A program made the position numbers and the translations under genes. From contig CM074808.1 of assembly GCA_037447605.1 (NCBI GenBank), positions 2,914,001 to 2,978,000 of the forward strand: DNA of 64,000 nucleotides, read 5' to 3'. The notes beneath the pieces were generated by a model that searched no databases, was not told the DNA's origin, and saw nothing but the letters and a program-made list of their open reading frames with translations. Of this stretch, positions 5,776 through 64,000 are shown piece by piece. Origin of the DNA: Zygnema circumcarinatum SAG 698-1b (lineage: Eukaryota > Plantae > Zygnematophyceae). How positions within the stretch are numbered: position 1 is the stretch's first letter; the number at the start of each line of letters is the position of its first letter.

Positions 5776-7926
5776 TCACACGGACATCCGTTTCAACTCC
5801 TCCAGCCTCGCCTTCAAGCTGGAAATCTCAGCCGCCCATTCTGGACGAACCTGAATGGGCTTCACAGGACCTTCAGGCACTTTCTTTTCCAGACGCGAAG
5901 CCCCTGCCCGCTCCTTGCGAGCGTTTCCTGAGCCTGCCCCTTTCTGCTTCTCTTCAGCCTTTGCTTTCTCAATGGCAACTTTTTGCATTGCAGCGAGAAT
6001 CATCTCTCCTGTAATTCGTGGCTTTCCCACATCACTACTCTCTTTTGGCGCTTCCTTGTCCGTTTCCTCCGTGCTTGATTCTGTTGAGTTTGCCATCACG
6101 TCATCCGATTCACTGGATCCTTTCGTCCACCTGTCACCTCTGAACTTTCGACCTTTCACATCACTGTGAACGTCGTTAGCCAAGACGGTTTTTGCTGCGG
6201 TACTCTCCGAAGTTGCACTAGGTAAAGGTACAGACTCTTCTCTCCTCTTATTTCTCCCTCTCTGCTCTCCAGCATTTCTAGTCTCCTCGCTCTTTTGATC
6301 TCTGACTTTTGATCTCCCATGTAACCTGGATCTCGGAGCTTGTGTCCCATTATTCGCATTCTCTTTCACTTCCTCCCTCACACGGCTCTTGCTCGTAGAT
6401 GTCTCCTTTTTCAGCCTTCTGAGACCATTTTGCCCCAGTTTTTCCTGCCCATCCTCATCAGCATTTGCAACCGCCGCTTTCCCAGTTGGTTCGTGCTTTG
6501 AATGTTTTCGATTTACACGGTCTTGTTCCTCCTCTTCTCCTGATGTCTTCTGTTCTTCACTCTTTCCAATTGACCGACTCTCAATTAAATCGTCACTGTT
6601 TTTTAGTTCCGCCATTTGAGTTTTAGCATCTTCATCGATGTCCCGTTCGTCACCCAATTCCTCCCGATCATCTAGGTTGTTGTCACTCCAACTGTCTGAC
6701 TGTGAAACTGGAAACCCGTCCGCAACAGTAATAGCAGGATCCGCAACAGTAATAGCAGTATCCGCAACAGGTGAAAATCCAGCCTTCAAGATGGCCATTC
6801 CAGAAAAGGGGTTACTTCCTCCTCCCTGAGGTATCCTACGCTCCGCACGCTTTGCTCGCTCCTTATTGATTGAACGCCCAGCTCGTGCTCGAGAAGCCGC
6901 TTGCTTGGACACCGCAGGCTCATTACCATCACGGACAATATGCTCACTGCCAAAATTCCTACTTTCCGACTGTGTCCCCTCAGACTGCAGCGGGACATGG
7001 GCCGGCTTATAAACATTTTGCTTTCCAAGTGCATCTGTCTCTGCTCCAGCGCTTGTTTCTTTGTCCACTGTCTCCTCAAATTGAACTTCCGTGGTAAAGT
7101 CTTTTGAGTTCTCTGATGAAACTTCCAACAGTTCAGGAACAGCCGGAACGAGCTGTGCTCTAAGGTCCACGAGAGCTGCAAAAGGTGATGAGCGACTCAC
7201 TCCTTTCGCTAATTTTTCATCCACTTCCAGGGAATTAGAGGCTTCCACATATCCGGACATTGCTGCCCGAGGCAACTCCAACCGCTTTGCAGGCTGCAGT
7301 CCAGTCAATGCTGATAGTTCATCTAATTTAGCTGCTGTTGCTGATCCTGAATTAGATTCCCTTACAGAACGACTTAATATCGACTGAACCCTACCAATTG
7401 TACCGCCATTGAGACGAACTTTCACGCCGCGTGGATGAAAGCTACTGTTTGTTAGTACTTCAGCCACAATGCCGCGTGTCAGTTTACCTGATCGCTGGTC
7501 TTCCTTGCACACTACCTCTACCTCTACGCCTGGAGGAACCCGACTTCGCACGCAGGCATCCTTTGAGGGCGTAACTTGCGCCGAAATAGGGGCTTTCGAT
7601 GAATTACGCGCTTGGAAACCCTTTCCATTGCGATGCTGCATAGATATGCCTTCAAATGGAATGCCTAGAAAGTGAGACGATGCCGAAGTCTGACAGGAAA
7701 GGCGGTGCGTCTTCTCACAGGACTTCATGGCGGCAGACGTCGTTGGGGGCTTCCCCGCAGTCACACTGACGCCATTTTTCCGTCCAAGAAAGACGAAGGT
7801 ACCTTCCGACATAGGCTCCACAAATATATGGAAACTTGCAACGCAGGGATGCCTCCCCATGGGAGCCGCTCTCCTGATGGCGGCCATGTCTGCTGGCGCC
7901 CCCCCACCCGCTACCGCAGCCGCCAT
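5776..7926 (-). CDS. Intronless 716-aa protein with a YwbE/DUF2196 domain, a long charged low-complexity region and a C-terminal coiled motif; possibly organelle-targeted
   Basis: aa ~127-184, RSRVPPGVEVEVVCKEDQRSGKLTRGIVAEVLTNSSFHPRGVKVRLNGGTIGRVQSIL, matches the YwbE pattern. The C-terminus is GPVKPIQVRPEWAAEISSLKARLEELKR. Confidence 0.8.
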   Translation of the reverse strand: MAAAVAGGGAPADMAAIRRAAPMGRHPCVASFHIFVEPMSEGTFVFLGRKNGVSVTAGKPPTTSAAMKSCEKTHRLSCQTSASSHFLGIPFEGISMQHRNGKGFQARNSSKAPISAQVTPSKDACVRSRVPPGVEVEVVCKEDQRSGKLTRGIVAEVLTNSSFHPRGVKVRLNGGTIGRVQSILSRSVRESNSGSATAAKLDELSALTGLQPAKRLELPRAAMSGYVEASNSLEVDEKLAKGVSRSSPFAALVDLRAQLVPAVPELLEVSSENSKDFTTEVQFEETVDKETSAGAETDALGKQNVYKPAHVPLQSEGTQSESRNFGSEHIVRDGNEPAVSKQAASRARAGRSINKERAKRAERRIPQGGGSNPFSGMAILKAGFSPVADTAITVADPAITVADGFPVSQSDSWSDNNLDDREELGDERDIDEDAKTQMAELKNSDDLIESRSIGKSEEQKTSGEEEEQDRVNRKHSKHEPTGKAAVANADEDGQEKLGQNGLRRLKKETSTSKSRVREEVKENANNGTQAPRSRLHGRSKVRDQKSEETRNAGEQRGRNKRREESVPLPSATSESTAAKTVLANDVHSDVKGRKFRGDRWTKGSSESDDVMANSTESSTEETDKEAPKESSDVGKPRITGEMILAAMQKVAIEKAKAEEKQKGAGSGNARKERAGASRLEKKVPEGPVKPIQVRPEWAAEISSLKARLEELKRMSV

Positions 7927-39613: not shown

Positions 39614-42256
39614 ATGGGGCTCCACGCGCTGGCGCCCTCTCCCGCTGCCACGTGTGCATGCTCTCTGCAGAGGTCCTCTCCAGCGCCTCCATTCTCTGCG
39701 GCATGGCCGCCATTGAGGAGAGGATGGCGGCTCATCTCTCAGCGCAGGCTGTCATGGTATCCAAGACATGGCGCGGTGCACGCCACAGCCATGCAGGACG
39801 GACATGGAGATGCGATGAACGTTCAAGGTGGTATATTTCTGCTGTCTTTTCGATCACCTTTTTGCAGTCTCTTGAATGTTTTCGTTCTGATCCCCTCATC
39901 GTTTGGAAACGTGAATTGAAGCATGTTTTGCCTCCAATCTCAAATTGGCGGCATTGTTTTAAGCTAAATCTGGTGCTTTTTCATGTCAGCAACTTGACTC
40001 GCTGGTCGTCGTAAAGCGACAGTTGCGGGGCTAGTGCAGTTAGATGTGCACAAGCTACTGTAGCCTGCTCCTGTGCTTGAAAGGGTGCTGTGTTGTGGTA
40101 GACCAGCTGTTCCACCTGACTAGCTGTCAAGTCCAGCTTGTTGCTGGAAATGATAATTCTTCCTTGTACTGCAGTAAATTCAGCACTGTAGTTCAGTCAA
40201 CTTTCACAGTAGGGTCTACAATTTGTTTTCCGGGCATGAATTAGCACTGCGTACACACTCCCTTCTCTTCAGCCAAGCACAGAGGTATACTGAATTGCAA
40301 GATTTTTAAATTCGGAGTCTCTGTGAAGAGTTGATTTTTATCCTGTAATTCAGTTTATTGACTAAAATTCAAAATTGTTCTGCAGAGCTCGCGGATGGCA
40401 GTCTCCTATTTTCATTTGGAAACGATGGTGAAGGCAAGAAGGAAATACTGGCTAGCATAGGACAAACAGGGAGCCCTCGACCCCCTCATCGGCTTCCCTC
40501 TGTGTTTCAAAAGCGCAGTCCGATTCCTAAAAGACAAGCTCAGCCAAGGCCGATTCAAAAGCATGAAGTGGGAGCTGAAGGGCCCGTTTCCATGCCTGAA
40601 GGGGCAGAGCCAGTTGTCACGCCAAACAATGCTTTGCAAGGGATGGCAAGTGTTCCAGCTCGCCCGCCTTCTAAGTTTGTGAAACATTCTCCCATACCTG
40701 CTGGAGTTCGGCGGAGCCTTCGTTCGCCCCCAATTCCGGCAAATCCTCTATCAATTTCCGAAAATACATATGGCCATTCTCTATCAATAGATGCGCCTTC
40801 CTTCACTTCCTCTGAACCAGTTGCAGCTTCCCTGACAGAGCACGCTGAAGCGTTTGATTCAGATGTTCACACCAATTCACCATTCTCTTCTCCATCATCT
40901 ACTCATGTTCACTTCTCACAGCCTCCTGAAAGAGGGTCGTCGTCGGCTGCGTCTGCTGCATTTATTTCCAGCACTCATACCCCCTCCTCTAATGGTGCAG
41001 CTTTTGTGTTACAGCCAGTCATTTCTTCCCTTCCGCAAACACCCGTTAGGATGGCTCCTTCAGCCGTTAAGCCTTCCGCTACAGTACGACCCACAACTCG
41101 ACGTCAAGCTTCTTCTTCTGAGAGTGGTTTTGCAACTTCTAATGAAGGTGGAGAAAGCTCAGAGTTCTTAGCCCCTTCAAGACCACCTTCTACATTTGTG
41201 AAACGATCACCTATTAGTAATCGCAGTCCAGTTAGGGATGCCACACCCAGGGCAGGTGGCAGCAGTTCGGGCTCTCCTTCAGAGCTTGTAACTCGTGCAG
41301 TCCCAAGGTCACAACCTGCAGCAAAGAAAACCTCATCTGCAGCACCAGGGAGCAGGAGAAAGATGGCAAAGAAAGTGGAAGGTAGTCTGGTAGTGCCTAC
41401 TCCTCCCACCCGTCCGCCTTCAAAGTTCATACGGCGCTCTCCAATTTCTGGCCCCACGCCATTGAGATATCCACCTGCAGTTTCAATCACTCCTGTGGAC
41501 GATTCTGGTAGTTCTGCATCTGATGTCCAGGCCCAGGTGGTAGAGGCGAAAGAAGTGACACCCCCTGTTCCTAAGAAGAAAATGTCTGAGAAGAAAATGT
41601 CTGAGAAGGCTGGGAAGAGCAGCAGAGTGACTGCCACCAAACGACAGGCTGCAGCTGCTGTGGTTTCTCAAGAAGGTGAGGATTTTCTTGCTGGGACACC
41701 TGCAAGTGAGCAAGGCAGTGTGTTCTCGCATTCTATAGGTATTGAGGCAGACCAGGGGACAGTAGGGGCCCCGCAAAAGAAGGCTGCAAAGAAAAAGGAT
41801 CGGAAAGCGAAGATGGAGAATAATAAAGCTGCAGATGCTGGTATAGATACAGATACAGGTACAGATAAAGGGACTGACTCCTCACTTGAGTCGGCAGCTC
41901 TTGTGGGAAGATCCATCCCCGATGCGTCTGTGTATCGGAATGGAGTTGACCTTCCTTCTGTGCAAAATAATGAGGGAGGCCTTACGTTTGGTGGTAGCAA
42001 CTTCAGCGAGCTGGCAATAGGAGCAAGTATCAGTGAAATGGAGGAGACTTCTAGTAGGAGCGGAGTGTCAAGTGAAGACAACAGTGAGGATTCAGGGCTC
42101 CAAGAGGGAGCATTGCAACAGGAGGCGCAACATGGAGGAGAGGAACTTAAGTCCTTGACACTGCCAAAACTAAAGGAACTGGCCAAGGCTAAGGGCCTCA
42201 AGGGGTATTCCAAACTTAAGAAGTCCGAGCTTGTCGAGGCTTTAATAAACCCTTAG
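39614..42256 (+). CDS. RHON1: Plastid Rho termination factor N-terminal-domain protein (RHON1-like); 5' exons not fully resolved
   Basis: Transit-peptide-like first exon from ATG 39614; large exon 40386-42256 ending ELKSLTLPKLKELAKAKGLKGYSKLKKSELVEAL (Rho_N); four RPPSxFxxRSP-type motifs. Confidence 0.8.
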
Positions 42257-47374: not shown

Positions 47375-48816
47375 TTAGCGCACTATTGCATTTAAGGGAA
47401 TGCAAATCACGCGCCCCACATGAAGGTTCCTATTCAAACAAACTTCCTTCTTGTTCAAGGCTTTGTACGTCGACTTCTTGTTGCCGAAGTACAATTTCAC
47501 TAACTTCGCACACGAGTCGCCCTTTCTTATTTTGTAGGTCTTGCCCGTGCAGCCGGCGGCTATGCCTGTCATCCGCTCGCCTGTCAAGTAAATCTGCACA
47601 GTTTTGGGGGGGTTATAAAGGTTTGCATTAGTGTTTCTAGGGTTTTAGATTACGTACTGTTTTTAGTACAGACAACCCCAGCGTTGCATTTGAGAGTGAA
47701 CCAAGTGAGCAAGGGAGAGTGAGAGTACATGTTACGCATCCTGCAAGGGACTCAAACTAAAGGCAAAAACATCAGGACATTCACGACAAGCATTTCATGC
47801 AAGCGCCCTCACCCTTAAACCCTTAAGAACATAATAAGGAATAGGTTTTGACGAGCACCTCTTGTCCAAAGCTTTCATCGAAAGATGTTGATAAGACCAA
47901 CCGGATGCAGTAAATTCCACGATTGAGAGCAAAGAACAGGAGGGAGTTGCCGTTGAAGAGAGTGGCGATGATGGATGCACATGTGTCCCCCTTTGCCGCG
48001 ATGTATGCCGAAGTGGGAACTAAAACATCGGAGGGACTCCCCTTCGAGATGCACATCTGCATGGGACCGGCGGCATGCAAAGCATGTGAGGATGGGCATG
48101 TGAGAGGAATAACCCTAAAAACCCTAAAAACCGTAAAAACTATAAAAACCCAAATGTAACGATTGGTAGCGAGATGGACCACACGCAGGCAAGGACAGTG
48201 GCGATCCAAGATTTTGCTCAAGGAAGGCTAAGCCCATTTTGAGGGGAGGCTAAGCCCTCTTTCAGCATAAAATACATATTATAAAATATAAAAAAAAAAA
48301 TGAATTTGCAAAATCTCCAGGGGGGGTAAGCCCGTAGACCTGCTGTCCAGGCTGAAGTTTGGAGCAGTTGAAGCTCGGGTTGAGGGAGTTGGGTCCCACG
48401 ATTTCGGCAATCGACTTTTTCAACAATCCTCCAATCGAGTCACAAGTGTCACCCTGTAATTTTATCCAAATTAAAGTAAAATTTTAAGCCAAAGGACAAT
48501 GAAGAAGGAGAGATTACATTGCACGAAGCTCGCTCCTTATCACTTTCCAATTGTACCAGTCAATCATGGCTACGAAATACGCCCAGAACGACCATTCTGT
48601 GACAGCTTTTACAAACTTCTTCTCCGCCAGAAACTGCCAATTGGAGGATGAAGCTACAACGCACCTTGTTGATTGCATACGTCACGTTGCAATTGGGCAG
48701 CTGCAGGGGGAAGGCCACTGTCACATTGGTCCCCGCGGGGAGGGGCACACTGCAGTTGATGGCCTGCACATGCATGCATGGCCCTCGACTCTTCCGCCAT
48801 TAGTCGACAGGCCTCT

Positions 48817-48882
<66 letters not shown>

Positions 48883-51800
48883 AATAAAAACCTAAAAACC
48901 TTGACAACATTGATTTTTAAAATCCTCTATGCATGCATTAGCAGCTGAACATATCATCATAATAACAAATAGTGAGAAAACTAATTAGCATACGAAAACA
49001 CACCAATAAGAGATTCCATGCTACAATTCATTTGCTATCGCCGTACATGCAGTGGTGAAAGAAGCAGAAGCAACGACTGTCTCTAAAACGAGGTGCAAAA
49101 TCATACCGGGTTCATCTGCAGGAAGGCAGCGAGCGTGAAGCCGTACAACTGAATGATGGTGTCACATGTTATGGGAGTAACGACGAAGTACGTGCGCGAA
49201 GAATTTGATGCTGCGTGGTGAAAAAAACAGTAGTAAGAAAAAAAAGAAACTTAAAACTATTAGATTCTATTCAATAATCACGCTTGAATACTCGAGTTTC
49301 ATTCGACCATGTGAGAACTTTGCACTTCAATTCAATGCAGAATTTCGTGTTCCACATCGCAACCTAATATAGCCCTCTTACCTCTCATTACAGCCACCTG
49401 CACTCCCTACTTTTACTATGGAAGGTGCCAATACTTACTCCAAATGCAGGTGGGTTTTCCGTCAGCAGCAAATGTCCCCAACTCGAGTCCGAGAGGACAA
49501 ACGCAAGCATAGTTGCCGGGGGAGTTGGCCACGTCAGCACATGCTCCTTGCCCGCACGGATTGAAGGTGAAGAATGTGCAGGGAGACACTGCCAATGTCA
49601 ACAGAAACAGAAGAAAGATTGCCATCAATAGACTCAACAGAACTAAGAAATATGAGAAACGAGTTGCAACATTTTCCTTGAAGCAGAGATGTTTGGCCCT
49701 TCACCTGGAACACAGGATTCGGAGCCGTCAGCTGCAACTGCCACAGTGAAGGGCGACCTGCAGTCGCATTTGTTGGTCAAAACAGAGCGGGAGATTCCAC
49801 TCACTACCACCTGCTTTGTGATAGGGCTGCAGGTGTACCCTCCGCAAGGGTTCAGCATGCCCGGGCCCACTGCGTTCTGAAGCTTCAACTTCCCAAATGC
49901 GTTGTTGTTGCAAGGGTCCGGCCCTAAGCAGGGAGACAACGGAGAAGAGTTTAGTCAATTTGCAAAACTCCTTAGACTACAGAATGGACGAGGGAAACGT
50001 AAACCTGAAAAAAAACCCAAACATTTGGTTCTATACCACCCATCAACCAACACTTCTGCAGTGCCGGAGGAGTGAACAGTCGAAAGAAGTGGAGAAATGC
50101 AGAGAATGGATATAAACTGTAGAAACTCTGTGATTCCGAAATGTCTATGAATACAAGATGTCTCATCCACATGGGTGAAGCTACCTCATTCGAAAAACAA
50201 AACATGTTCGGATGAAGTTTTTTTTTTCTTTTCACGCACCTTTGATGACTGGATAGATGGCAGGCAGAGTGTTGATGTTGCAGATGCCCGTCCCCCCCCG
50301 GATGGCCATCCGCATATCGCCGTTCTCTCCCCATGCAGGGCCCCATGAGTTGCGGATTTTCCAGTGCTGCGGTGACGTGGTCAAATCGTAGCCGTAGACC
50401 ACTACGCTATGATCCACCCCCTCATCTGCGCAGCTATCGTCGTCATATATACCCTGCAACGCAACGAGAGTCACCCGTAATCACGCTCAAGACCTTTCAT
50501 ATATCTAAAGAATAAGAATACATTATGGAATCAGTGTTCGTCAGCTAGTAGTAGTAGTAGTAGTACAAATCACTGAATTTTCAATCTTAGGAATGGCTGC
50601 GATTAAAAAGATGAATTCACATTAAAGCCCAAAATCGCATATGCCTCGTACCCCGTTATAGTTGATGAAGGAGATGTGGTTCGCTCGGATTGTCACGATC
50701 ACGGACTGCTGCTGCACGACCAGCATGAGACCAATCCATCCATAGAAATTGACCATCTCATAGGAGGTCACGTTCAGAGACGTCCTCTGCAGGCAAAAAA
50801 ACAAGATGTCAACAACTTCCAACAGCCTGCATGCTTTAAAAATCTTAAAAAACTAGCAAAAAAGAAATTAAAAAAAAAATGTAAAAATTCTGTAAATTTT
50901 TTTGCAAATGCAAAATTTTTGATCTGCTTTATTCGCTTCCTTTCGGCAAAAATAGTGCCAGTTGAGGATGTACAGTGATTCCACAGTTCTTGGATGCAGT
51001 CGACCCCGCGTAGGGGTAAGCGATGGAGGTAGTGACTCCATTCTTGATGACAAAGTCGAGAGCAGTTCCGGGCCACTCCCCATCGCACCCACTTGTTGCA
51101 GCGCAGTCCAAAATGTGCTCTACGGAGATGTCCGGCAGTGAGGCCCCTCCGTGGTACAGAAAGTATGCCGTTTCCAAGGTTGCAGCAGCTGCAAATGCCC
51201 AGCATGCATCTGGACAGCACAAGGAATATATTCCGTCAGTGGGGCATGGAAACACATGGCAACGCAGGGCAGCCTCATGTGATTTGCGTAAAAGAGAGAG
51301 ACCAAATGTGATGGTGATGGGTGGGATGCGATTGCGGGTTGTGAGGACATTATTGCATTGCCTTTTGTTGTGTGCAGTGTGAAGTTTGGAAGAATAGGAG
51401 TCCTAAACGCCGTACAAGAGAGACACAGAGAGAGTGACACTTCCATTACACAAAATTCCAAACTGATCATAAGCATCCAAAACTCTTGAAGAATTCTACA
51501 AGCACTTCGTAGTTGGTGAATGTATGAGGAAAAGAGAAATGACATACTGCAAGTTGAACCCTGCGATTTGACCGGTCGGAGTGCTCCCTGTTGACTCCAA
51601 TCCCACTGCATCGCCGCCAACCATGACGGCTTCTTGTCTAAAGAATTCAAATATCCCGCACTCGCATAGCGGAACCCCGTGCCCGAAAGACTTGTTTGTG
51701 GAAAAATCGATAAGCCAAATGTGAATGCACCTGCTCCCAAAATGCAACAGTCCTTTGTCCTTATTGAAAATGTGTTTCCAGAAATGCTGTTCCTGCTCTC

Positions 51801-54800
51801 ACGAACTCTTCTTCTTCTTCTATCCCTTTCTCTGCCCACAGCTCGCATTGCTTCGCAATCATCATCACGTTCCATGGCTTGAGCAAGAAAAAAAGATAAC
51901 GAGTTCATGGAATAGACATGCGTGCTCTCTGAATACCAGAACACTCACTAGAGGGGAGGGGAGTTGCAGTGGGAGGAGGAAACATAAAGAAGGCAGAGGA
52001 GAGAAGAGAACAGAAGCGAGTGAACCGCGAGATAGTGGGAAAGATAGAATTTTGAAGAGGGAGGATAGAGCCCATTTGACGAAGGACCAACCAAAAGGCG
52101 AACATATAGACTCACCAAAACGGCATGTTTTGCCAGAATTGGTTGATGTATAGCCCGAGTCGCATAAACAAGTAGGTGCTGTACTGTCAGAGCCGGGCAT
52201 GCATTGGCCATGGCCGCCACATGCACCTTGAGTTTGATAGCTATCGCAGAAAGCAGAACATTCTGAATAGCTTCCTTGAGTTTCTAAGAGACAAGCTGAT
52301 GTGGGGTCGGCAGTTAAGCAATTTTCGGCCAAAGATCCGAAAACTGTAGGGGTTCTCGCTTGTGAATTAAAATCTGGTGGGCAGAATTCTCCGGATGAGT
52401 TGTATAGGATGGGACTTCCAGAGAAATAGTTGTTGCGGAAGTTGACATATTTTATAATGCTGGATTGGAATGTGGAGATAATTTGACCGGTAAAGTAATT
52501 GTTTTGTACGTCTCTGAAAGCACCCCCATTTAATCAACATTTACTTCAAATAAATAAGTAAAGAGATTAAACTTCAAACAAGCACTCCTTCAGATTCTCA
52601 CAGACAGCTTTCCTGTTAAAAACTTGCCATTCTGGGTTTTGAAGGTCTGAAATGTCCTACAGCTCTGTGAGGTATGGCAGATGCGCGATTATGTGCGGAA
52701 GCTCTCCCGTGAATCGATTATCATTCAGAAACCTACAAAAAAAAAAAACATACCATGTGTTTTTCATCGCTCATCCTTACTTTTGAGAAGAGAATTGAAC
52801 CAAAAGGTAATTGAAAGGACAGAAAAAGCTCACAGATTTCGAAGTGACGTCATTGATGCGATGCTCGCTGGAACAACTCCAGTAAATGAGTTTTCAGGCA
52901 GAAACCTGCATCATAAAAAACTACGACAAGTTTTTTATGTTCAAAACATAAAAAACTACGACCCCATAGTCGAACCAGAGTTACACATTTGAAAAAATGA
53001 AAACTTGCCGTTCGTGTGAAGTGACCCTGTCACGGCTTGGAATTCAAAGTTTTTAAAGGCAGGATTTTCCCCCTTACAAGTGCCAAAGGTATTGGAGATT
53101 TCCGAGACTGCCCGGTAAAGTGCCGGTCAGTGAGCAACCATATGCGCTTCTGAACCACCAGATCGCAGAAGGCACAGAAAAAAAAAAAAAAAAAAAAAAA
53201 AGCGTTCAGAAATCGAGAATGAGTCCTAAGATATTTTAAACGTTTACACTGATCCCATTTTTGGCGAGATCTCCGACATCAAACTGACAGCCTGCAAGTC
53301 AGAAGTTTAACATATATCGATGAAGGACTTGAAACTTGACCACTTTCTTTCAACCCAGAAGTGAAATGAGGGGCAGAAAGAGGCATGTGAGAACTAGGGA
53401 GAGAGAGAGAGAGAGGGTAACAGGGAGAAGGAGAGAGGGAGAGAGGGAGAGCGAGATGGCTATATGTCAATTCCACGAGAACGTCTTGTATTCAAGAGCA
53501 ATTCGACAGTCTCATACTCACAAGGTAACTAAACTTTTCATGTTTCCGATGTTCGAAGGAAGGGTCCCCCCTAAAGGGTTCCTCTGTAACTCTCTGATAA
53601 ACGATACATAACATCAGCCATGTAAGAAAGTAAGAAATTTCATCAAGGAAAGCTCTGATCTTTAGAAGTGGGATAGCCAATAATCAATCCACTCCTTTTC
53701 TGCATTGTCGTCTCCCCTTCTCTCCGTCCTTCCCATTCTCTTAACGATGAAATCAGTGTCCTGTTGCTGTTTTAAGAAATGAAGATTTTCAAACCCTAAG
53801 TTTTTCATATTCAGCTGTTACCCATTCCAATTCCGTATCACAGTTGAACTAGATCTATATCTAGTTTTTTTAACCGCCCGGGCTCATTCCATTACTTGAA
53901 AGGAAACTGGTTTCAGTCTCTCTAATAGCCCCGTTCTCCCCTTCGCAATTTGTAGATGCAGCTCACACAGGACACTCACAAGTATTGCAATGACTGAAGA
54001 TTCGTAATGGTTATTGGAATGCCACCGGAAAAGCTGTTCTTACCAAGTTTCCTGCAACATTTAAAAAGAAATCACGATATAGCTTGGTTTAGGAACAGAA
54101 CATCCAAATATGTAAATTAGAAACCAAAAGAACAAAATAGTAAAACCAGTGACAAAACAGAGTAAGTCTTCCACTGCTAAGCGACCCGTTATCGACCAAC
54201 TTGCTGATTGCAAGAGCGCATTATCCTACATGTAATATCGTTTAAAGTTTATTGACTCACAGAGTGACAATTTTCGATAGGATGCCGATGCTAGGTGTAA
54301 TTTTTCCTGTCAGGCTTTGAGAAGTCAAATCTCTGCAAGAAAAGAAAGGACCTTTGTTATACCTTCTCCTTACTTTTTCCATCCTCTCCCTCGCTCTTTC
54401 CCCCTATCCACTTTGCTCTCTTCCCACCTATCCTTCTCCCATCCCACTCTTCTCTCCTCTCCGTTTCTACAACAGTCTCCCTCTCATCCATTTTCGCACT
54501 CCCTCTTTCCCTATCTCTCCCTGCTCCCTCTTGCGACCCGCTCCATCTTTTGTCTATCTCTCTATAAAATTGGTGCTATAATGACTCTACTTACATTTTG
54601 TTCACTGCTCCAGTTGCGTCACACCAAACACCGTTCCAGTAACTTGTGATCATGCAATCGCCGTCGTAGACCCAATTGTTTAAGTAAGCATTGGGGTCAC
54701 TTGTTATTCCCCTCTTGAAGTCCATGAGGACTCTCACTGCAATTGATGGAGGGCAAGAACGCTATACATTAGCCCATATAAGCACAAGCTGATTGATTAG

Positions 54801-57388
54801 TCATTCATTTCTAAGTCCGCATTGCGTCGATAGGTTCATTCCAAAGCTTGAGTTCCGGTAACAGGAACGAGTAGCTTCATTCCACTCTCTAAATTACAGC
54901 GAGAGTTTTTTAGAGCTGCTAAAGCAGATAAAAAGGGAGGCTCTTACGTTCAGGTAAAAGTGTAGCCGGAGTGCCAAATGCTTGAACTTCGCAAAGGGTT
55001 AAAAATCGATTATCTCCAGGAAGATGAGCCCATAGGTAGCGACCAGATAGGAAGCAATCTATGGTGAAGGGGAATCCGCGGTCTGTGTCCGAATACACAA
55101 AGTTTGCATTGGGATTACAACGCACATTTCCAAAAGCATTCCAAGAACTGTTGCTGTTACCGACCCACACCTCCACCCCATTCAGTCGGTCAAAGCAAAC
55201 ATCGCAGTCGAGTCGGTTGAATAAGTTAACAACGTTCACATTGAAGATGGCTCCCAGGTCGACATACCACCACGGGTCACTCTGTTCATTTGTACAACTG
55301 CAATCATCTGCAAAATTCCATGAGGTGATACCGTTCACCGCATAGAACGCCCCTCCTCCAGGAAACAAGCTCGACTGAAAAGCAGGTTTGTTCACAGCAA
55401 GATTTGGAGCTCCATAGACCTCCACTTCACAAATTGTGAGGATAATACTTTGAGGAAGGTAAAGCCAAACATAACGACCGCGAACATAACAGGGCTGAAT
55501 GTGCGGAAAGCCGGTTGAGCTTGTTGAGAATGCAAAGATAGTAGAGGGGGAACATTGAGTATTTGCAGTGATGGAGTCGTTGTTGTTGCCAATCCAAACT
55601 TGAACACTGTTCAGTTGATCTGCACAGCAATCCTGCCTGTTGAATATCTTCACCCAGTCGATCAGATGTTCTGTTTGAAGGTCCACCTTCCACCACAGAG
55701 GAGCTGGCGAATTCCAGAACGTTGAAGCACAAGTTTTGCTCCCCCAATTGCCCTGCCCATTGTTGCCATCAACAGCTAAGGATGCAGGATATTGGACCCC
55801 TCCATATACTCCAACCTCTGATATGAAAGACGGTTTCTTCAGGGCGACATTGCCTGCAAACAGACATTGCGTAAAATTTGAAAAAGATATCCACGATTTT
55901 AGTCCAGCGGGGGTCTGAGATGCAAGATTTTTAATTTAGGGGGGGCAAACCAATGAGTTGGGAAAAGTTCTGAAATTCGAGTGTAGTTTTTCTACTCAAC
56001 CTTCAAAGGCGGTTTCAGTGGCTGACAGCTTTTCAAAATCTGAGGGGGGAGGGGCTAAGCCCCCCCTCAAGCAGCCATGGATCCGCCACTGGACCATCTC
56101 TGTGCTTGTTTATTACTCGCTAACCTTCAGAGGCAAACCTACTTGGATAAATAAAAGCAGGGAAGCCGAGGAGACGATCTTTGCCACTCGGAGGGCCTCA
56201 ACATTTGAAGCGATGTCCAGCCTATTACGAGTTTTTCCTTTCTACTTAACTTTGACTTTGATTTTGGCAACAACCTCAAGCACTTACTGACGGACGATGA
56301 AACTCGATATGCTTCGATCATCCGGCAAGCGTTGAAGAAGAAGAAACTCGTCACGGCATGGAGCGCTCTCCAAGGGGTCACCTGTACCTGCATGCATGCG
56401 CAGTACAAAAGACGTGACTCCAAAAGGCGTGTTCAACCAGGCTCAATCGGTGCCACCAAAGTCAAAAAATCAACAACTTGTCCCTCGACATTGTCAACCC
56501 CATGATCGAAAGAGAGGGGTCAAAGCGGCAGCGCTATAGAAGGCCTGTACAGAATATGGTGGGGAAGGACGACCATATACCTTCGCTTTTAACGACAGAC
56601 ACATGGTTGGTTCAGGGCACAACGCAGTGGACAATGAAAAGCATCGCCATGCATGCCATACATGAATGTCAAACCATACGCGGTCAAGTGTACATAACCA
56701 TGCATCCATACCATACTGTACGCATGTCAATACACTCGTGCTATACCTCATACCATACATGCATATCCGTTCATGCGTGCAAACCGCACAATCAACACAT
56801 TGATATGGTGTGCATGCACATCCCACATCCGTACAGGTACGCGCATGCATCACATCCAAATGTGCTTCACCCCACATTTCATGCGCATCCATGCGCCTCC
56901 GCCATGCGACACATGGCATCCTCACATCCTTGCTATGCTCCCATGCACCCACGCCATGCACATCCGTACATCCCAGGATGGGATCGCCGGCTTGTCGAAG
57001 GAGGCTTGTCCTGGCCTGGCTGTACGGTCACCGCATGCAAAATTCTATCCTGGCCAAGGTCACAAACGGGAGCCGCCGCAAAGGTGTGCCCACAACTCGC
57101 ACCAAACTCGCATGCATGCATGGGTGCATGCATATTGTGCGCCATTCAGAGGCTTAAAAACTTCAGTTTTCTTTCTTTCGTCCTTCCTTTCATCTTTCTT
57201 TTCCCCATGTTGTGGGGTAAACAGCACATGGTGGTCCACTAGTTGATTCCCAGGGGGGCTGAGATCTTCTATTCTTACTCCGTTGTTTGTTTTTTGTTTC
57301 AATTTCCTTCGACTCCATCTCCTTTTCCTTTTCTCGGACCCAAAAGCACGCAGCCACTCACCCCCTTCGCCGCCCGCCGGCCCGCCAT
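47375..57388 (-). CDS. ~1267-aa multidomain protein: 2x F-type lectin (FTP), LRRNT, LRRs, EGF, papain-family (C1A) protease, 2x EGF, 4x LysM
   Basis: 21 exons (57388-57362, 56387-56288, 55853-54948, 54736-54595, 54332-54261, 54051-53980, 53593-53522, 53149-53078, 52905-52834, 52513-52116, 51730-51548, 51209-50974, 50786-50652, 50453-50240, 49923-49705, 49588-49439, 49210-49107, 48763-48665, 48453-48340, 48056-47859, 47593-47375). All have GT-AG boundaries with matching phases and sum to 3804 nt. Confidence 0.82.
48196..48333. mobile_element. Truncated MITE in an intron of the multidomain gene, same family as 55902-56094
   Basis: Starts CAGTGGCGATCCAAGATTTT and contains GGCTAAGCCC repeats shared with the copy at 55902. 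Confidence 0.5.
48817..48875. repeat. (CT)n microsatellite, intronic
   Basis: Directly visible. Confidence 0.95.
55902..56094. mobile_element. Intronic MITE-like element with imperfect TIRs
   Basis: Left end GTCCAGCGGGGGTCT versus right end GGATCCGCCACTGGAC; internal GGGGCTAAGCCCCCC. TSD not clear. Confidence 0.5.
56480..57145. repeat. CATG/ATGCA-rich low-complexity intronic insert, probably repeat-derived
   Basis: Dense catgca/gcatcc/catac motifs inside intron 1 of the multidomain gene. Confidence 0.45.
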
Positions 57389-60928: not shown

Positions 60929-60938
60929 NNNNNNNNNN
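60929..60938. other. Assembly gap (N10)
   Basis: Ten N characters. Confidence 1.
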
Positions 60939-62273: not shown

Positions 62274-63314
62274 CTACCTCCGTCTCTTCAGCTCTTCCAG
62301 AATGTGTTCTCCCAATCCTACAACCTTTGCAGCAAATTCGTCCAACATTTGTTTGCTCCTTTCCTGAAACACCAACTGCGCCTGTTCTGCCCTCTTGTGA
62401 GACAATTCCATAACTTCCCGCAGAGCTGCACTCAACTCTGCTTGTTGCCTGTTGCGTTTCTTCCTCCCAACGGTATTTCGCAGTGTTTCATTGCTATTTG
62501 GCGCCGCAGGAGGCATATCTGGCACTTGAGTATGCGCCTGCTCTCCCGGAGGAAGGACGTGCCTGTAAACCCCTAATGCACTGCCCCAGATTATTGAAGG
62601 GTCTTTTTCAGACACCCATGAATCCATCGCATGAAACAGCTTCTCTGATAGCCCTGCGGGCAAATGACAGGCTCGCCGTTCGTCCGGATTCATATCCCAA
62701 TAGCTTTTTGCTCCGTCTTGTTGCTTAAACTCTTTTACTTTCTTGTAATAGTTTCTCAACACATCCCACCTTCGTCTACATTCAGGTCCAGTCCTCGTCA
62801 CTCCTGCGGTAGCCAGAGCTTCAGATACTTTCCTCCACCTGCTGTATTTTCTCGTTGTTTTTTCCTTTATTCCTGAATTTTCCCTCTGCCATTCTTCTTT
62901 CTTTATTTCAATCAACAGCAGCGACTCGTGATCGCCCCATTTTTTCGCCTTTTTGCCTTTCTTCGCCTGGCTTTCTTCACCGCCTTCCATCTCATCATCC
63001 TGTCCTTCTGACTCTGCTCCACTCTGCGAGTTGACATCCTCTCGCAGAATGCCTGCAGAACCTACTTCCTTCTTGTTCAAACATTCGGCAGAAAACTCTT
63101 TTGATGCATCGTCTCCATCCTGCTGATGGTCGTCAGTCTCTGGTCCAGCTGATGTAGACGGATGATTCCCTACACCTCCTGGCTGAAGCTGCTTCAGCGC
63201 GGTGATGTATTTGATTAGGTCACCAGTGCTCATTTTGGTAAAATGCAAGCGCTCGCCTCGTCTATCCTCAAAAGGAGCGCATTCAGCAGTGGGGTCCGCT
63301 CCGTGCTCCATCAT
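62274..63314 (-). CDS. Trihelix (Myb/SANT-like, GT-type) DNA-binding protein, intronless ORF
   Basis: KKWGDHESLLLIEIK...RWRKVSEALATAGVTRTGPECRRRWDVLRNYYKKVKEF...SYWDMNPDERRACHLP, followed by a C-terminal coiled coil. Confidence 0.85.
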   Translation of the reverse strand: MMEHGADPTAECAPFEDRRGERLHFTKMSTGDLIKYITALKQLQPGGVGNHPSTSAGPETDDHQQDGDDASKEFSAECLNKKEVGSAGILREDVNSQSGAESEGQDDEMEGGEESQAKKGKKAKKWGDHESLLLIEIKKEEWQRENSGIKEKTTRKYSRWRKVSEALATAGVTRTGPECRRRWDVLRNYYKKVKEFKQQDGAKSYWDMNPDERRACHLPAGLSEKLFHAMDSWVSEKDPSIIWGSALGVYRHVLPPGEQAHTQVPDMPPAAPNSNETLRNTVGRKKRNRQQAELSAALREVMELSHKRAEQAQLVFQERSKQMLDEFAAKVVGLGEHILEELKRRR

Positions 63315-64000
63315 TCCTCCCACTCCCTGTGCATGTTTCCCAATCCGTTGGTCCTCCAGCAGCGCCGCCTGGGGATACAGCAGGAGCTGCTCTTCCCTTT
63401 CAACTGAGAGCCTTCAGCTCTGCATCCTGAGGAGGCCCAGGCCCTGCACATCCCTGGAGCAGCCCCAGCCCCAGCCCGAGTCCCAGCCCCAGCCCGAGTC
63501 CCAGCCCCAGCTCCAGCTCCAACCCTAAACCTCTCCCTGCAAGCGGAGGGAAAATCACAAAAAAAGCAGCTCAGGCTGCAAGGAAACCTGTCCAAAAAAC
63601 TATCGAGTGAGTTTGCTGATGGCATTGGCGCGTATGCTGACGCAATATAACTGGCATTCTGTGAGAAATCTAGAACATTCTACAGTAGTTAAATGTACAG
63701 TACAGTAAACAGATTGTAGTATTTAACTCGAAACGGGACTGCGAGGACTCATAGATTTGCGTCGCATATGTACGGCACCACGCTGTCCGTACAGTTTTCA
63801 GAAAGGCCTGTTGGTTCATGACTCATTCGTACGCTTTCCTGTTCCTGCAGACTGAGAAGTGAGGACTGTCGTCCCTTTGAATTTTAGAGCCGGGTCTTTC
63901 TGAAATGGGAATGCAAGGAGAATGTTGGAACTTGGAAGGAGTGTTTCTGGAACGGCTGCAAACTTTTCACAGATCGGACCATTAGACAAACCAGTCGACT

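What the first reader, a model, noticed from the sequence alone, without database searches (positions are those of the whole stretch)
47375..57388. Single gene joining two lectin types, LRRs and an active papain protease (FTPx2-LRR-EGF-C1A-EGFx2-LysMx4)
Seen: about a dozen short ORFs and pieces missed by the ORF track splice into one 21-exon frame of 3804 nt (1267 aa) with consistent phases. It includes five exact 72-nt phase-2 LRR exons (e.g. DLTSQSLTGKITPSIGILSKIVTL), an LRRNT (LMDFKRGITSDPNAYLNNW...C...WNGVWC), papain Gln/Cys/His/Asn (KSQG, ACWAF, DHSV, RNSWG) and four LysM repeats; no transmembrane segment is evident. Established: F-type lectins bind fucose-type glycans, LysM binds GlcNAc polymers (chitin, peptidoglycan), LRRs bind proteins or peptides, and C1A proteases act in plant apoplastic immunity. 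Inference: a soluble sensor-effector protease targeted to microbial or cell-wall glycans, acting in algal defence, mucilage remodelling or mating. I do not recognise this full architecture from land plants.
Basis: partly seen in the sequence, partly recalled or inferred. Interest (0 to 1): 0.88.

Follow-up and report, generated by a model that had tools for sequence, protein, structure and literature searches.

The report
Lectin-headed LRR-papain-LysM protease gene
This alga related to land plants carries what reads as one 22-exon gene for a large secreted protein joining two fucolectin-type modules, receptor-type repeats, an intact papain-type protease that lacks its usual built-in inhibitor segment, and four chitin-type LysM modules; earlier notes of this scan describe the same body plan at other places in this genome, I found no paper on it, and I could not show that the gene is transcribed.

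Summary
On the minus strand, 57388 to 47375, I rebuilt a stop-free chain of 22 exons (3783 nt, 1260 aa), every intron GT..AG. There are six 72-nt phase-2 LRR exons, not five. The domain order is FTPx2, LRRNT plus 8 LRRs, EGF, papain, EGFx2, LysMx4. Papain Cys, His and Asn are present.

- Both F-type lectin domains lack the canonical fucose-binding His (Ser/Arg/Gln and Cys/Arg/Arg).
- The protease has no I29 propeptide; EGF1 runs straight into the mature N-terminus.
- All six module boundaries are phase-1 introns, and the FTP pair is one intron-less 1-1 exon, so it can be swapped in frame.

I obtained no transcript or database support. My protein searches retrieved neither this protein nor any relative of its body, largely for technical reasons. 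"One gene" therefore rests on phases, short introns (101-478 nt between the modules) and the lack of separate signal peptides.

Earlier notes of this scan report the same LRR-EGF-papain-EGF-LysM body with other heads at several other places in this genome. I could not test those notes. On that reading this is the FTP-headed member, not a unique architecture. The most likely function is a glycan-tethered extracellular protease.

The parts
57362..57388 (-). Candidate exon 1: ATG plus 8 codons (MAGRRAAKG), ends in phase 0
   Evidence: ATG followed by a GTGAGT donor. Uncertain: an alternative start ATG lies at 56393.
56288..56387 (-). Candidate exon 2 (100 nt) with a moderately hydrophobic signal-like core (ALHAVTSFFFFNAC), ends in phase 1
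   Evidence: Acceptor AG and a perfect GTAAGT donor. Hydropathy maximum over 14 residues is 1.35.
56139..56196 (-). Alternative exon 2 (58 nt), giving a more canonical signal peptide (MAGRRAAKGALRVAKIVSSASLLLFIQVG)
   Evidence: Same phases as the other candidate. Hydropathy maximum over 14 residues is 2.06, but the splice sites are weaker.
54948..55853 (-). Single 906-nt phase 1-1 exon encoding two F-type-lectin-fold (FTP) domains
   Evidence: PF22633 E 5.9e-27, two stretches. FBP32 3CQO E 1.5e-42 and eel agglutinin 1K12 E 2.4e-15. Fish and amphioxus fucolectins are 35-38% identical.
54595..54736 (-). LRRNT exon (phase 1 to 2)
   Evidence: PF08263 LRRNT_2, 25.2 bits against a cut-off of 20.7. 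Splice sites.
54261..54332 (-). LRR exon 1, 72 nt, phase 2-2
   Evidence: AG..GT and a 24-residue plant-type LRR.
53980..54051 (-). LRR exon 2, 72 nt, phase 2-2
53522..53593 (-). LRR exon 3, 72 nt, phase 2-2
53078..53149 (-). LRR exon 4, 72 nt, phase 2-2
52834..52905 (-). LRR exon 5, 72 nt, phase 2-2
52661..52732 (-). LRR exon 6, 72 nt, phase 2-2
52116..52513 (-). Exon with LRR 7-8, a Cys-containing cap and EGF-like module 1; ends in phase 1
   Evidence: One continuous exon, so the LRR-EGF link needs no splicing. Weak EGF hits: EGF_Teneurin 22.2 bits, below its cut-off. Weak FLS2 LRR match.
51548..51637 (-). Papain exon J: mature N-terminus (QWDW...VKSQGSTC) with the oxyanion-hole Gln
   Evidence: Aligns to DW..VKNQG in uninterrupted papain ORFs, with a one-residue insertion before the CxxC.
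50974..51209 (-). Papain exon K with the catalytic Cys (ACWAF)
   Evidence: PF00112 E 2.7e-16. Aligns from residue 24 of ananain, papain and cathepsins.
50652..50786 (-). Papain exon L (central beta-sheet part)
   Evidence: No Pfam hit on its own. It is colinear in the alignment of the spliced domain with L002 and L004.
50240..50453 (-). Papain exon M with the catalytic His (DHSV) and Asn (RNSWG); ends in phase 1
   Evidence: PF00112 E 2e-14. Cathepsin K residues 148-213, E 4e-12.
49705..49923 (-). EGF-like module 2, phase 1-1 exon
   Evidence: Six Cys including a CxC pair. No Pfam hit. Codon-usage score is coding-like, 0.60.
49439..49588 (-). EGF-like module 3, phase 1-1 exon
   Evidence: Canonical six-Cys EGF spacing. 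Only a weak FXa_inhibition hit, E 0.052.
49107..49210 (-). LysM1, first part
48665..48763 (-). LysM1 end and LysM2 start
48340..48453 (-). LysM2 main part
   Evidence: PF01476, 13.9 bits, E 0.053. The donor GTCTAC is weak.
47902..48056 (-). LysM3 main part
   Evidence: Similar to LysM4, tblastn E 6e-4. Repeat alignment.
47375..47636 (-). LysM3 end, LysM4 and the stop codon
   Evidence: PF01476, 19.0 bits, E 1.4e-3. Aligns along its length to the LysM of fern chitinase A, 4PXV.

Best explanation
One minus-strand gene (about 57388 to 47375; 22 exons and 1260 aa in my model) encodes a soluble secreted mosaic protein. Its order is:
- a signal-like N-terminus;
- two F-type-lectin-fold domains;
- LRRNT plus eight plant-type LRRs;
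- one EGF-like module;
- a papain-family (C1A) catalytic domain with Gln/Cys/His/Asn in place and no I29 propeptide;
- two EGF-like modules;
- four LysM.

It most likely works as a glycan-tethered extracellular endopeptidase. The LysM repeats (GlcNAc polymers such as chitin or peptidoglycan) and the lectin/LRR head would hold it on a surface, and the protease would cut proteins there.

All module boundaries are phase-1 introns, and the FTP pair is one symmetrical 1-1 exon. Heads can therefore be exchanged in frame by exon shuffling. On the earlier notes' account, this is the FTP-headed version of a common LRR-EGF-papain-EGF-LysM body.

Shown here: exon structure, domain identities, catalytic residues, absence of a propeptide, cassette phases.

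Inferred: a single transcript, secretion, ligands, activity and role. My split for the role is defence or microbe-facing about 45%, the alga's own wall, mucilage or mating remodelling about 35%, other about 20%.
For: - A chain of 22 exons, all AG..GT, with no stop.
- The spliced papain exons J-M align colinearly over about 212 residues with uninterrupted papain ORFs of metagenome contigs (L002 36%, L004 33%). Those junctions are therefore right.
- Domain hits: PF22633 5.9e-27, LRRNT_2 above its cut-off, Peptidase_C1 2.7e-16 and 2e-14; 3CQO 1.5e-42.
- Catalytic Cys, His and Asn are aligned.
- The LRR-to-EGF1 link lies inside one exon.
- Gaps between modules are only 116-478 nt, while the next upstream gene (Myb/SANT ORF, 62277-63413) is about 4.9 kb away.
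- There is no in-frame Met with a hydrophobic start ahead of the LRRNT exon.
- All six module boundaries are phase 1, out of 7 phase-1 introns among 21. My hand-calculated hypergeometric value, from the phases listed, is about 1.3e-4.
- Every exon scores positive on a codon-usage test and the intron read-throughs score negative.
Against: - No transcript and no database protein supports the model. Searches returned neither this protein nor any relative of its body. Look-ups of neighbouring ORFs found no record of this genome.
- The signal peptide is ambiguous, with three possible 5' models.
- The fucose triad is incomplete in both FTP domains.
- LysM and EGF score below Pfam cut-offs exon by exon.
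- Cathepsin-L-type enzymes normally need their propeptide to fold, so its absence raises doubt about activity.
- A 274-codon open frame (51944-51123) with an in-frame ATG precedes exon J.
Confidence: 0.6

Rival explanations
1. The locus makes two or more products. Either separate genes exist (FTP, with or without the LRRs, and protease-EGF-LysM), or an internal promoter gives a shorter protease-EGF-LysM protein starting at the ATG of the open frame upstream of exon J (MNSLSFFLAQAM...).
For: A 274-codon stop-free frame (51944-51123) runs into exon J in frame. It contains an ATG followed by a short hydrophobic stretch. No transcript data link the blocks. Reading through the donor of the FTP exon meets a stop after 9 codons, so an FTP-only product is formally possible.
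Against: The open frame scores like intron by codon usage (-0.20 per codon, against +0.04 to +0.83 for the exons) and has no Pfam hit. Gaps of 116-478 nt leave no room for a terminator, a promoter and a signal-peptide exon. The LRRNT exon has no Met and hydrophobic start of its own. All boundaries are phase-compatible.
Confidence: 0.12
2. It is one gene, but the papain domain is not a free-running enzyme. Without a propeptide it may fold poorly, it may need activation or inhibition by a partner, or it may serve mainly as a binding module. The protein would then act as a multivalent adhesin or lectin.
For: There is no I29 or ERFNIN-type segment anywhere. One residue is inserted between the oxyanion-hole Gln and the CxxC (QGSTCNAC against QG-CGSC). 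An earlier scan note reports relatives with Ser in place of the catalytic Cys (not tested here).
Against: Gln, Cys, His, Asn and the NSWG Trp are all retained, and the domain is full-length and colinear with active-type homologues.
Confidence: 0.12
3. The model is intact on paper, but the gene is silent or a young duplicate on its way to decay. No such protein is made.
For: No fragment of it was found among proteins of 161-512 aa, nor in the mixed-alignment search, whose one hit was 988 aa long. Those collections include run assemblies. The gene sits next to repeat-rich DNA and an assembly gap.
Against: There are 22 exons and 1260 codons without one stop or frameshift. The splice sites are intact, and every exon has coding-type codon usage. 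The searches were limited by query length and word matching, so absence is weak evidence.
Confidence: 0.08

Closest known systems
The LRR-EGF-papain-EGF-LysM mosaic genes of the same genome, noted earlier by this scan (for example s1-339062, s1-378308, s1-360947)
   Same: By those notes: the same order of LRR, EGF, papain, EGF-EGF and four LysM, a secreted design and variable N-terminal heads. One relative is said to carry PAN-PAN-FTP-FTP-PAN.
   Different: Here the head is only two FTP domains in one intron-less exon, placed directly between the signal exon and the LRRNT exon. I could not retrieve any relative's sequence, so similarity was not measured.
Papain-family (C1A, PF00112) peptidases such as ananain, papain and cathepsin K or L
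   Same: A full catalytic domain with Cys25, His159, Asn175, Gln19 and the NSWG motif. Partial alignments to PDB enzymes score E 1e-12.
   Different: No I29 propeptide; the domain is embedded between EGF-like modules. One residue is inserted before the CxxC.
F-type lectins: striped-bass FBP32 (3CQO) and eel agglutinin (1K12)
   Same: A tandem two-domain arrangement, as in FBP32. The core motifs are conserved (PWW.VDL, NR.DC, CEV.V.G), E 1.5e-42.
   Different: The fucose triad His52/Arg79/Arg86 reads Ser/Arg/Gln in domain 1 and Cys/Arg/Arg in domain 2. Here the pair is the head of a protease, not a free lectin.
Plant LysM ectodomains and LysM chitinases, such as fern chitinase A LysM (4PXV)
   Same: TY.I..GD(T/S)C ... 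N....C ... L..G..(V/I)C pattern with plant-type Cys, in four tandem copies.
   Different: The LysM block is C-terminal to a protease. There is no membrane anchor, kinase or glycosidase. LysM1 lacks the GD pair.
Green-algal matrix enzymes with sugar-binding modules
   Same: Secreted algal hydrolases joined to LysM-type modules. PMC2728734 lists 'peptidase+LysM' among architectures of green algae and mosses that angiosperms lost, and uses a Volvox chitinase as an algal outgroup for LysM-kinase trees. PMC2474614 notes that the Volvox C1A enzyme VcPap-11 is induced by the sex pheromone.
   Different: From memory, Amon et al. 1998 described chitin-binding repeats on the Volvox enzymes; that paper is not held. 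I found no report of LRR or FTP modules on such proteases. F-type lectin modules are reported in chlorophyte receptor kinases, not in proteases (PMC12757656).

Membership tests
Peptidase C1A (papain family) | Catalytic Cys25 in the CW motif | tested here: met
   ACWAF aligns to SCWAF from residue 24 of ananain and papain.
Peptidase C1A (papain family) | Catalytic His159 and Asn175 | tested here: met
   DHSV and RNSWG align to NHAV and KNSWG of cathepsin K.
Peptidase C1A (papain family) | Oxyanion-hole Gln19 six residues before Cys25 | tested here: inconclusive
   The Gln is present (KSQG), but one extra residue lies between it and the CxxC.
Peptidase C1A (papain family) | N-terminal I29-type inhibitory propeptide (zymogen) | tested here: not met
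   EGF1 ends ...CRF and is followed after 12 residues by the mature DW motif. No ERFNIN or GNFD motif is present. No Pfam hit in any frame of the 478-nt intron, and its open frame scores as non-coding.
F-type lectin (FTP / fucolectin) | Sequence homology to the F-type lectin fold | tested here: met
   3CQO E 1.5e-42 and 1K12 E 2.4e-15. PF22633 E 5.9e-27, two domains.
F-type lectin (FTP / fucolectin) | Fucose-binding triad His52/Arg79/Arg86 (eel agglutinin numbering) | tested here: not met
   Read off the alignments. Domain 1 is Ser/Arg/Gln, by its alignment to eel agglutinin 1K12. Domain 2 is Cys/Arg/Arg, by its alignment to FBP32 3CQO at the matching motif positions.
LysM (PF01476) | A match to the family profile above the curated cut-off | tested here: inconclusive
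   Exon pieces reach 19.0 and 13.9 bits against a cut-off of 20.9. Three of the four repeats are split by introns and could not be submitted spliced. All four align to the 4PXV LysM.
Plant-type extracellular LRR (LRRNT_2 plus 24-residue repeats) | LRRNT_2 cap followed by L..L.L..N.(F/L)(S/T)G.(I/L)P repeats | tested here: met
   LRRNT_2 at 25.2 bits, above 20.7. Eight 24-residue repeats can be read in register. Single 24-aa exons give no Pfam hit.
EGF-like | Six-Cys EGF pattern recognised by a profile | tested here: inconclusive
   Module 1: EGF_Teneurin 22.2 bits, below 24.3. Module 3: E 0.052. Module 2: no hit. The Cys spacing fits in all three.
The scan's LRR-EGF-papain-EGF-LysM family | Measurable sequence similarity and shared exon structure with other members | not testable with these tools
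   No member could be retrieved. Only the domain order matches the notes.

The most novel reading that the evidence does not exclude
The propeptide-less papain domain is held in check, or switched on, by its own flanking recognition modules. Binding of a ligand to the LRR-EGF unit just upstream, or to the LysM or FTP modules, would then release proteolysis: a one-molecule extracellular sensor-effector. Phase-1 head cassettes shuffled across many copies would give the closest algal relatives of land plants a combinatorial recognise-and-cut repertoire that predates receptor-kinase immunity.
Probability: 0.12. Interest if true: 0.8.

Novelty: new variant of a known kind. Interest (0 to 1): 0.5.

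Why it matters
Land plants use separate molecules for extracellular recognition (LRR and LysM receptors, lectins) and for extracellular attack (apoplastic papain-like proteases). This gene appears to put all of these on one polypeptide, in an alga that earlier notes of this scan describe as a close relative of land plants. Three features make it more than a list of domains:
- The protease has lost the propeptide that normally folds and silences such enzymes.
- Every module is bounded by a phase-1 intron, which explains how different heads could be placed on one body.
- The fucolectin head has an altered sugar pocket.

If the gene is expressed and active, the family could be used to test how targeting modules steer an extracellular protease, and how plant-type immune modules were combined before land plants arose.

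Tried and rejected
1. Representative-library search with the FTP exon. It returned 7382 hits, and the top 150 are multi-FTP proteins. None carries anything similar to our LRRNT, LRR-end/EGF1, papain, EGF or LysM exons (blastp; for all 373 stored proteins).
2. Plain protein search with the FTP exon. It returned only animal fucolectins at 29-38% identity, with no fragment of this gene. The length filter (161-512 aa) excludes a 1260-aa protein.
3. Two attempts to widen the length filter by aligning window exons with a long unrelated protein, after local simulation:
   - A1 was swamped by fish multi-FTP proteins.
   - A3 returned only a relative of the padding protein.
4. Viral-contig scans meant to fetch a neutral padding sequence found nothing. 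I fetched a phage G region but did not use it, because proteins from that locus are barred from profile searches.
5. Metagenome scan with papain exon M. It gave 32 generic papain loci, none with LRR, EGF or LysM neighbours. They served only to validate the spliced protease.
6. Exact look-ups of three neighbouring ORFs, to find this genome's annotation, found none on record.
7. A single-exon start with a strong signal peptide: none found.
8. A hidden propeptide in the EGF1-to-protease intron: rejected.
9. A copy of the gene within the window: none.
10. Literature. I found no paper on an LRR-papain-LysM protein. Amon et al. 1998 is not held.
Full report
WHAT IS THERE

The region lies in eukaryotic, intron-rich DNA. 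Six-frame reading of the minus strand between 57.4 and 47.4 kb shows about twenty short stop-free pieces whose translations carry recognisable extracellular modules. I listed all AG acceptors and GT donors around each piece and chained the pieces.

The result is 22 exons, every intron GT..AG, 3783 nt and 1260 codons with no internal stop.

A codon-usage score, trained on the exons against the introns of this gene, is positive for every exon from the FTP exon onward (+0.04 to +0.83 per codon). It is negative for intron read-throughs. The training is circular to a small degree.

DOMAINS

- FTP pair. The 906-nt exon 55853-54948 encodes two F-type-lectin-fold domains: PF22633 E 5.9e-27 in two stretches. 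The best solved relative is the tandem fucolectin FBP32, 3CQO, E 1.5e-42, followed by eel agglutinin 1K12. Fish and amphioxus fucolectins are 35-38% identical.
- LRR block. The next exon is an LRRNT_2 cap (25.2 bits, cut-off 20.7). Six 72-nt exons and the start of exon I then give eight 24-residue plant-type LRRs in register.
- EGF1. Exon I continues, without any intron, into a Cys-rich cap and an EGF-like module (weak hits only).
- Protease. Exons J, K, L and M encode a complete papain-family domain: PF00112 E 2.7e-16 and 2e-14. Cys25 aligns to ananain and papain. His159 and Asn175 align to cathepsin K.
- Check on the protease junctions. The spliced J-M protein aligns colinearly over about 212 residues with uninterrupted papain ORFs on metagenome contigs (L002 36%, L004 33%). 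This independently supports the three junctions inside the domain.
- EGF2 and EGF3. Two more six-Cys EGF-like exons follow.
- LysM block. Five exons encode four LysM repeats. Exon by exon these stay below Pfam's cut-off (19.0 and 13.9 bits against 20.9), partly because three repeats are split by introns. All four align to one another and to the LysM of fern chitinase A, 4PXV, including its Cys positions.
- Anchors. No hydrophobic stretch qualifies as a membrane span, and the C-terminus has no GPI-like tail.

First, neither FTP domain keeps the fucose-binding triad of eel agglutinin (His52, Arg79, Arg86). The chain numbering reproduces these residue numbers. Domain 1 reads Ser/Arg/Gln by its alignment to eel agglutinin. 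Domain 2 reads Cys/Arg/Arg by its alignment to FBP32 at the matching motif positions. The fold is an F-type lectin, but fucose binding should not be assumed.

Second, the protease has no propeptide. EGF1 ends ...CRF, and 12 residues later comes the DW motif of the mature N-terminus. There is no ERFNIN or GNFD motif anywhere in the model. No frame of the 478-nt intron gives a Pfam hit. That intron and exon J do lie in a striking 274-codon open frame (51944-51123), but its codon usage is intron-like.

Third, the intron phases are ordered. All six module boundaries are phase 1: signal|FTP, FTP|LRRNT, EGF1|papain, papain|EGF2, EGF2|EGF3 and EGF3|LysM. Only 7 of the 21 introns are phase 1. By my hand-calculated hypergeometric test the chance of this is about 1.3e-4. 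The FTP pair is one symmetrical 1-1 exon, so removing or replacing it keeps the frame. This is the classical signature of exon shuffling. It fits the earlier notes of this scan, which describe one constant body with changing heads at other loci of this genome.

ONE GENE OR SEVERAL?

I found no transcript evidence. The case for one gene is intrinsic:
- LRR and EGF1 share an exon.
- The gaps between modules are 116-478 nt, whereas the nearest upstream gene (a Myb/SANT-type ORF at 62277-63413, PF13837 E 2e-14) is about 4.9 kb away.
- The LRRNT exon has no Met and hydrophobic start of its own.
- All these modules are disulfide-rich secretory-pathway domains. They need a signal peptide, and only the 5' exons can provide one.

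The one loophole is an in-frame ATG with a short hydrophobic run in the open frame ahead of exon J. I give the rival of separate or internal products 0.12.

The 5' end itself is unsettled. The ATG at 57388 with exon 56387-56288 has the better splice sites. The alternative exon 56196-56139 gives a far more canonical signal peptide. An ATG at 56393 is also possible.

DATABASE AND LITERATURE CONTEXT

My large searches failed to reach relatives.
- The FTP exon finds only animal and bacterial-type FTP proteins. None of the 373 proteins I retrieved has a papain, LysM or LRR part like ours.
- The spliced protein cannot be submitted by reference. Two padded-alignment work-arounds failed.
- Neighbouring ORFs of this window are not on record in the gene-position collection.

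Everything I say about a family therefore comes from earlier notes of this scan, which I did not test.

In the literature I found no description of an LRR-papain-LysM protein. The nearest precedents are:
- 'peptidase+LysM' architectures listed for green algae and mosses (PMC2728734);
- a pheromone-induced Volvox C1A enzyme (PMC2474614);
- F-type lectin modules in chlorophyte receptor kinases (PMC12757656).

HOW IT MOST LIKELY WORKS

It is most likely a secreted, soluble endopeptidase. Four LysM repeats would tether it to GlcNAc-containing polymers. An LRR block and an altered fucolectin head would add a second specificity. The protease would then cut proteins at that surface.

The target could be a microbe (about 45%) or the alga's own wall, mucilage or mating structures (about 35%). 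That question is open.

The missing propeptide means one of three things: the enzyme is made active, it is controlled by its own neighbouring modules, or it is not a working enzyme.

VERDICT

By the scan's earlier notes this is one more member, with a new head, of a repeated mosaic-protease design that I did not find described in any paper, rather than a unique architecture. Interest is moderate.

Noticed in passing
window 51123-51944 (-): A 274-codon stop-free frame spans the end of the EGF1-to-papain intron, exon J and the whole next intron, with an in-frame ATG (MNSLSFFLAQAM...). That length is unlikely by chance, yet its codon usage is intron-like and it has no Pfam hit. It is unexplained and could mark an alternative internal start.
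   Followed up: partly
window 54948-55853 (-): The two-domain FTP head is one intron-less 906-nt exon in a gene whose other exons average about 140 nt. This suggests a late insertion of a ready-made cassette by exon shuffling, retro-copying or transfer.
   Followed up: partly
window 56500-57150 (both strands): A CATG/GCATGC-rich low-complexity block lies inside the putative first intron. It gives long ORFs on both strands (for example 254 aa on + at 56478-57242), which are almost certainly not genes.
   Followed up: no
window 48818-48875: A (CT/GA)n microsatellite of 58 nt lies in the intron between the first two LysM exons.
   Followed up: no
window 62277-63413 (-): The upstream neighbour is a 379-codon open frame with a Myb/SANT-like DNA-binding domain (PF13837, E 2.1e-14). 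Its exact product is not on record in the gene-position collection.
   Followed up: partly
window 60929-60938: A run of 10 N (assembly gap) sits in repeat-rich DNA between this gene and its upstream neighbour.
   Followed up: no
window 5779-7926 (-) and 40358-42253 (+): Two long single ORFs. One is 716 aa with only a DUF2196 domain (E 5.4e-25) near its N-terminus. The other is 632 aa with a Rho_N domain at its very C-terminus (E 8.9e-9).
   Followed up: no
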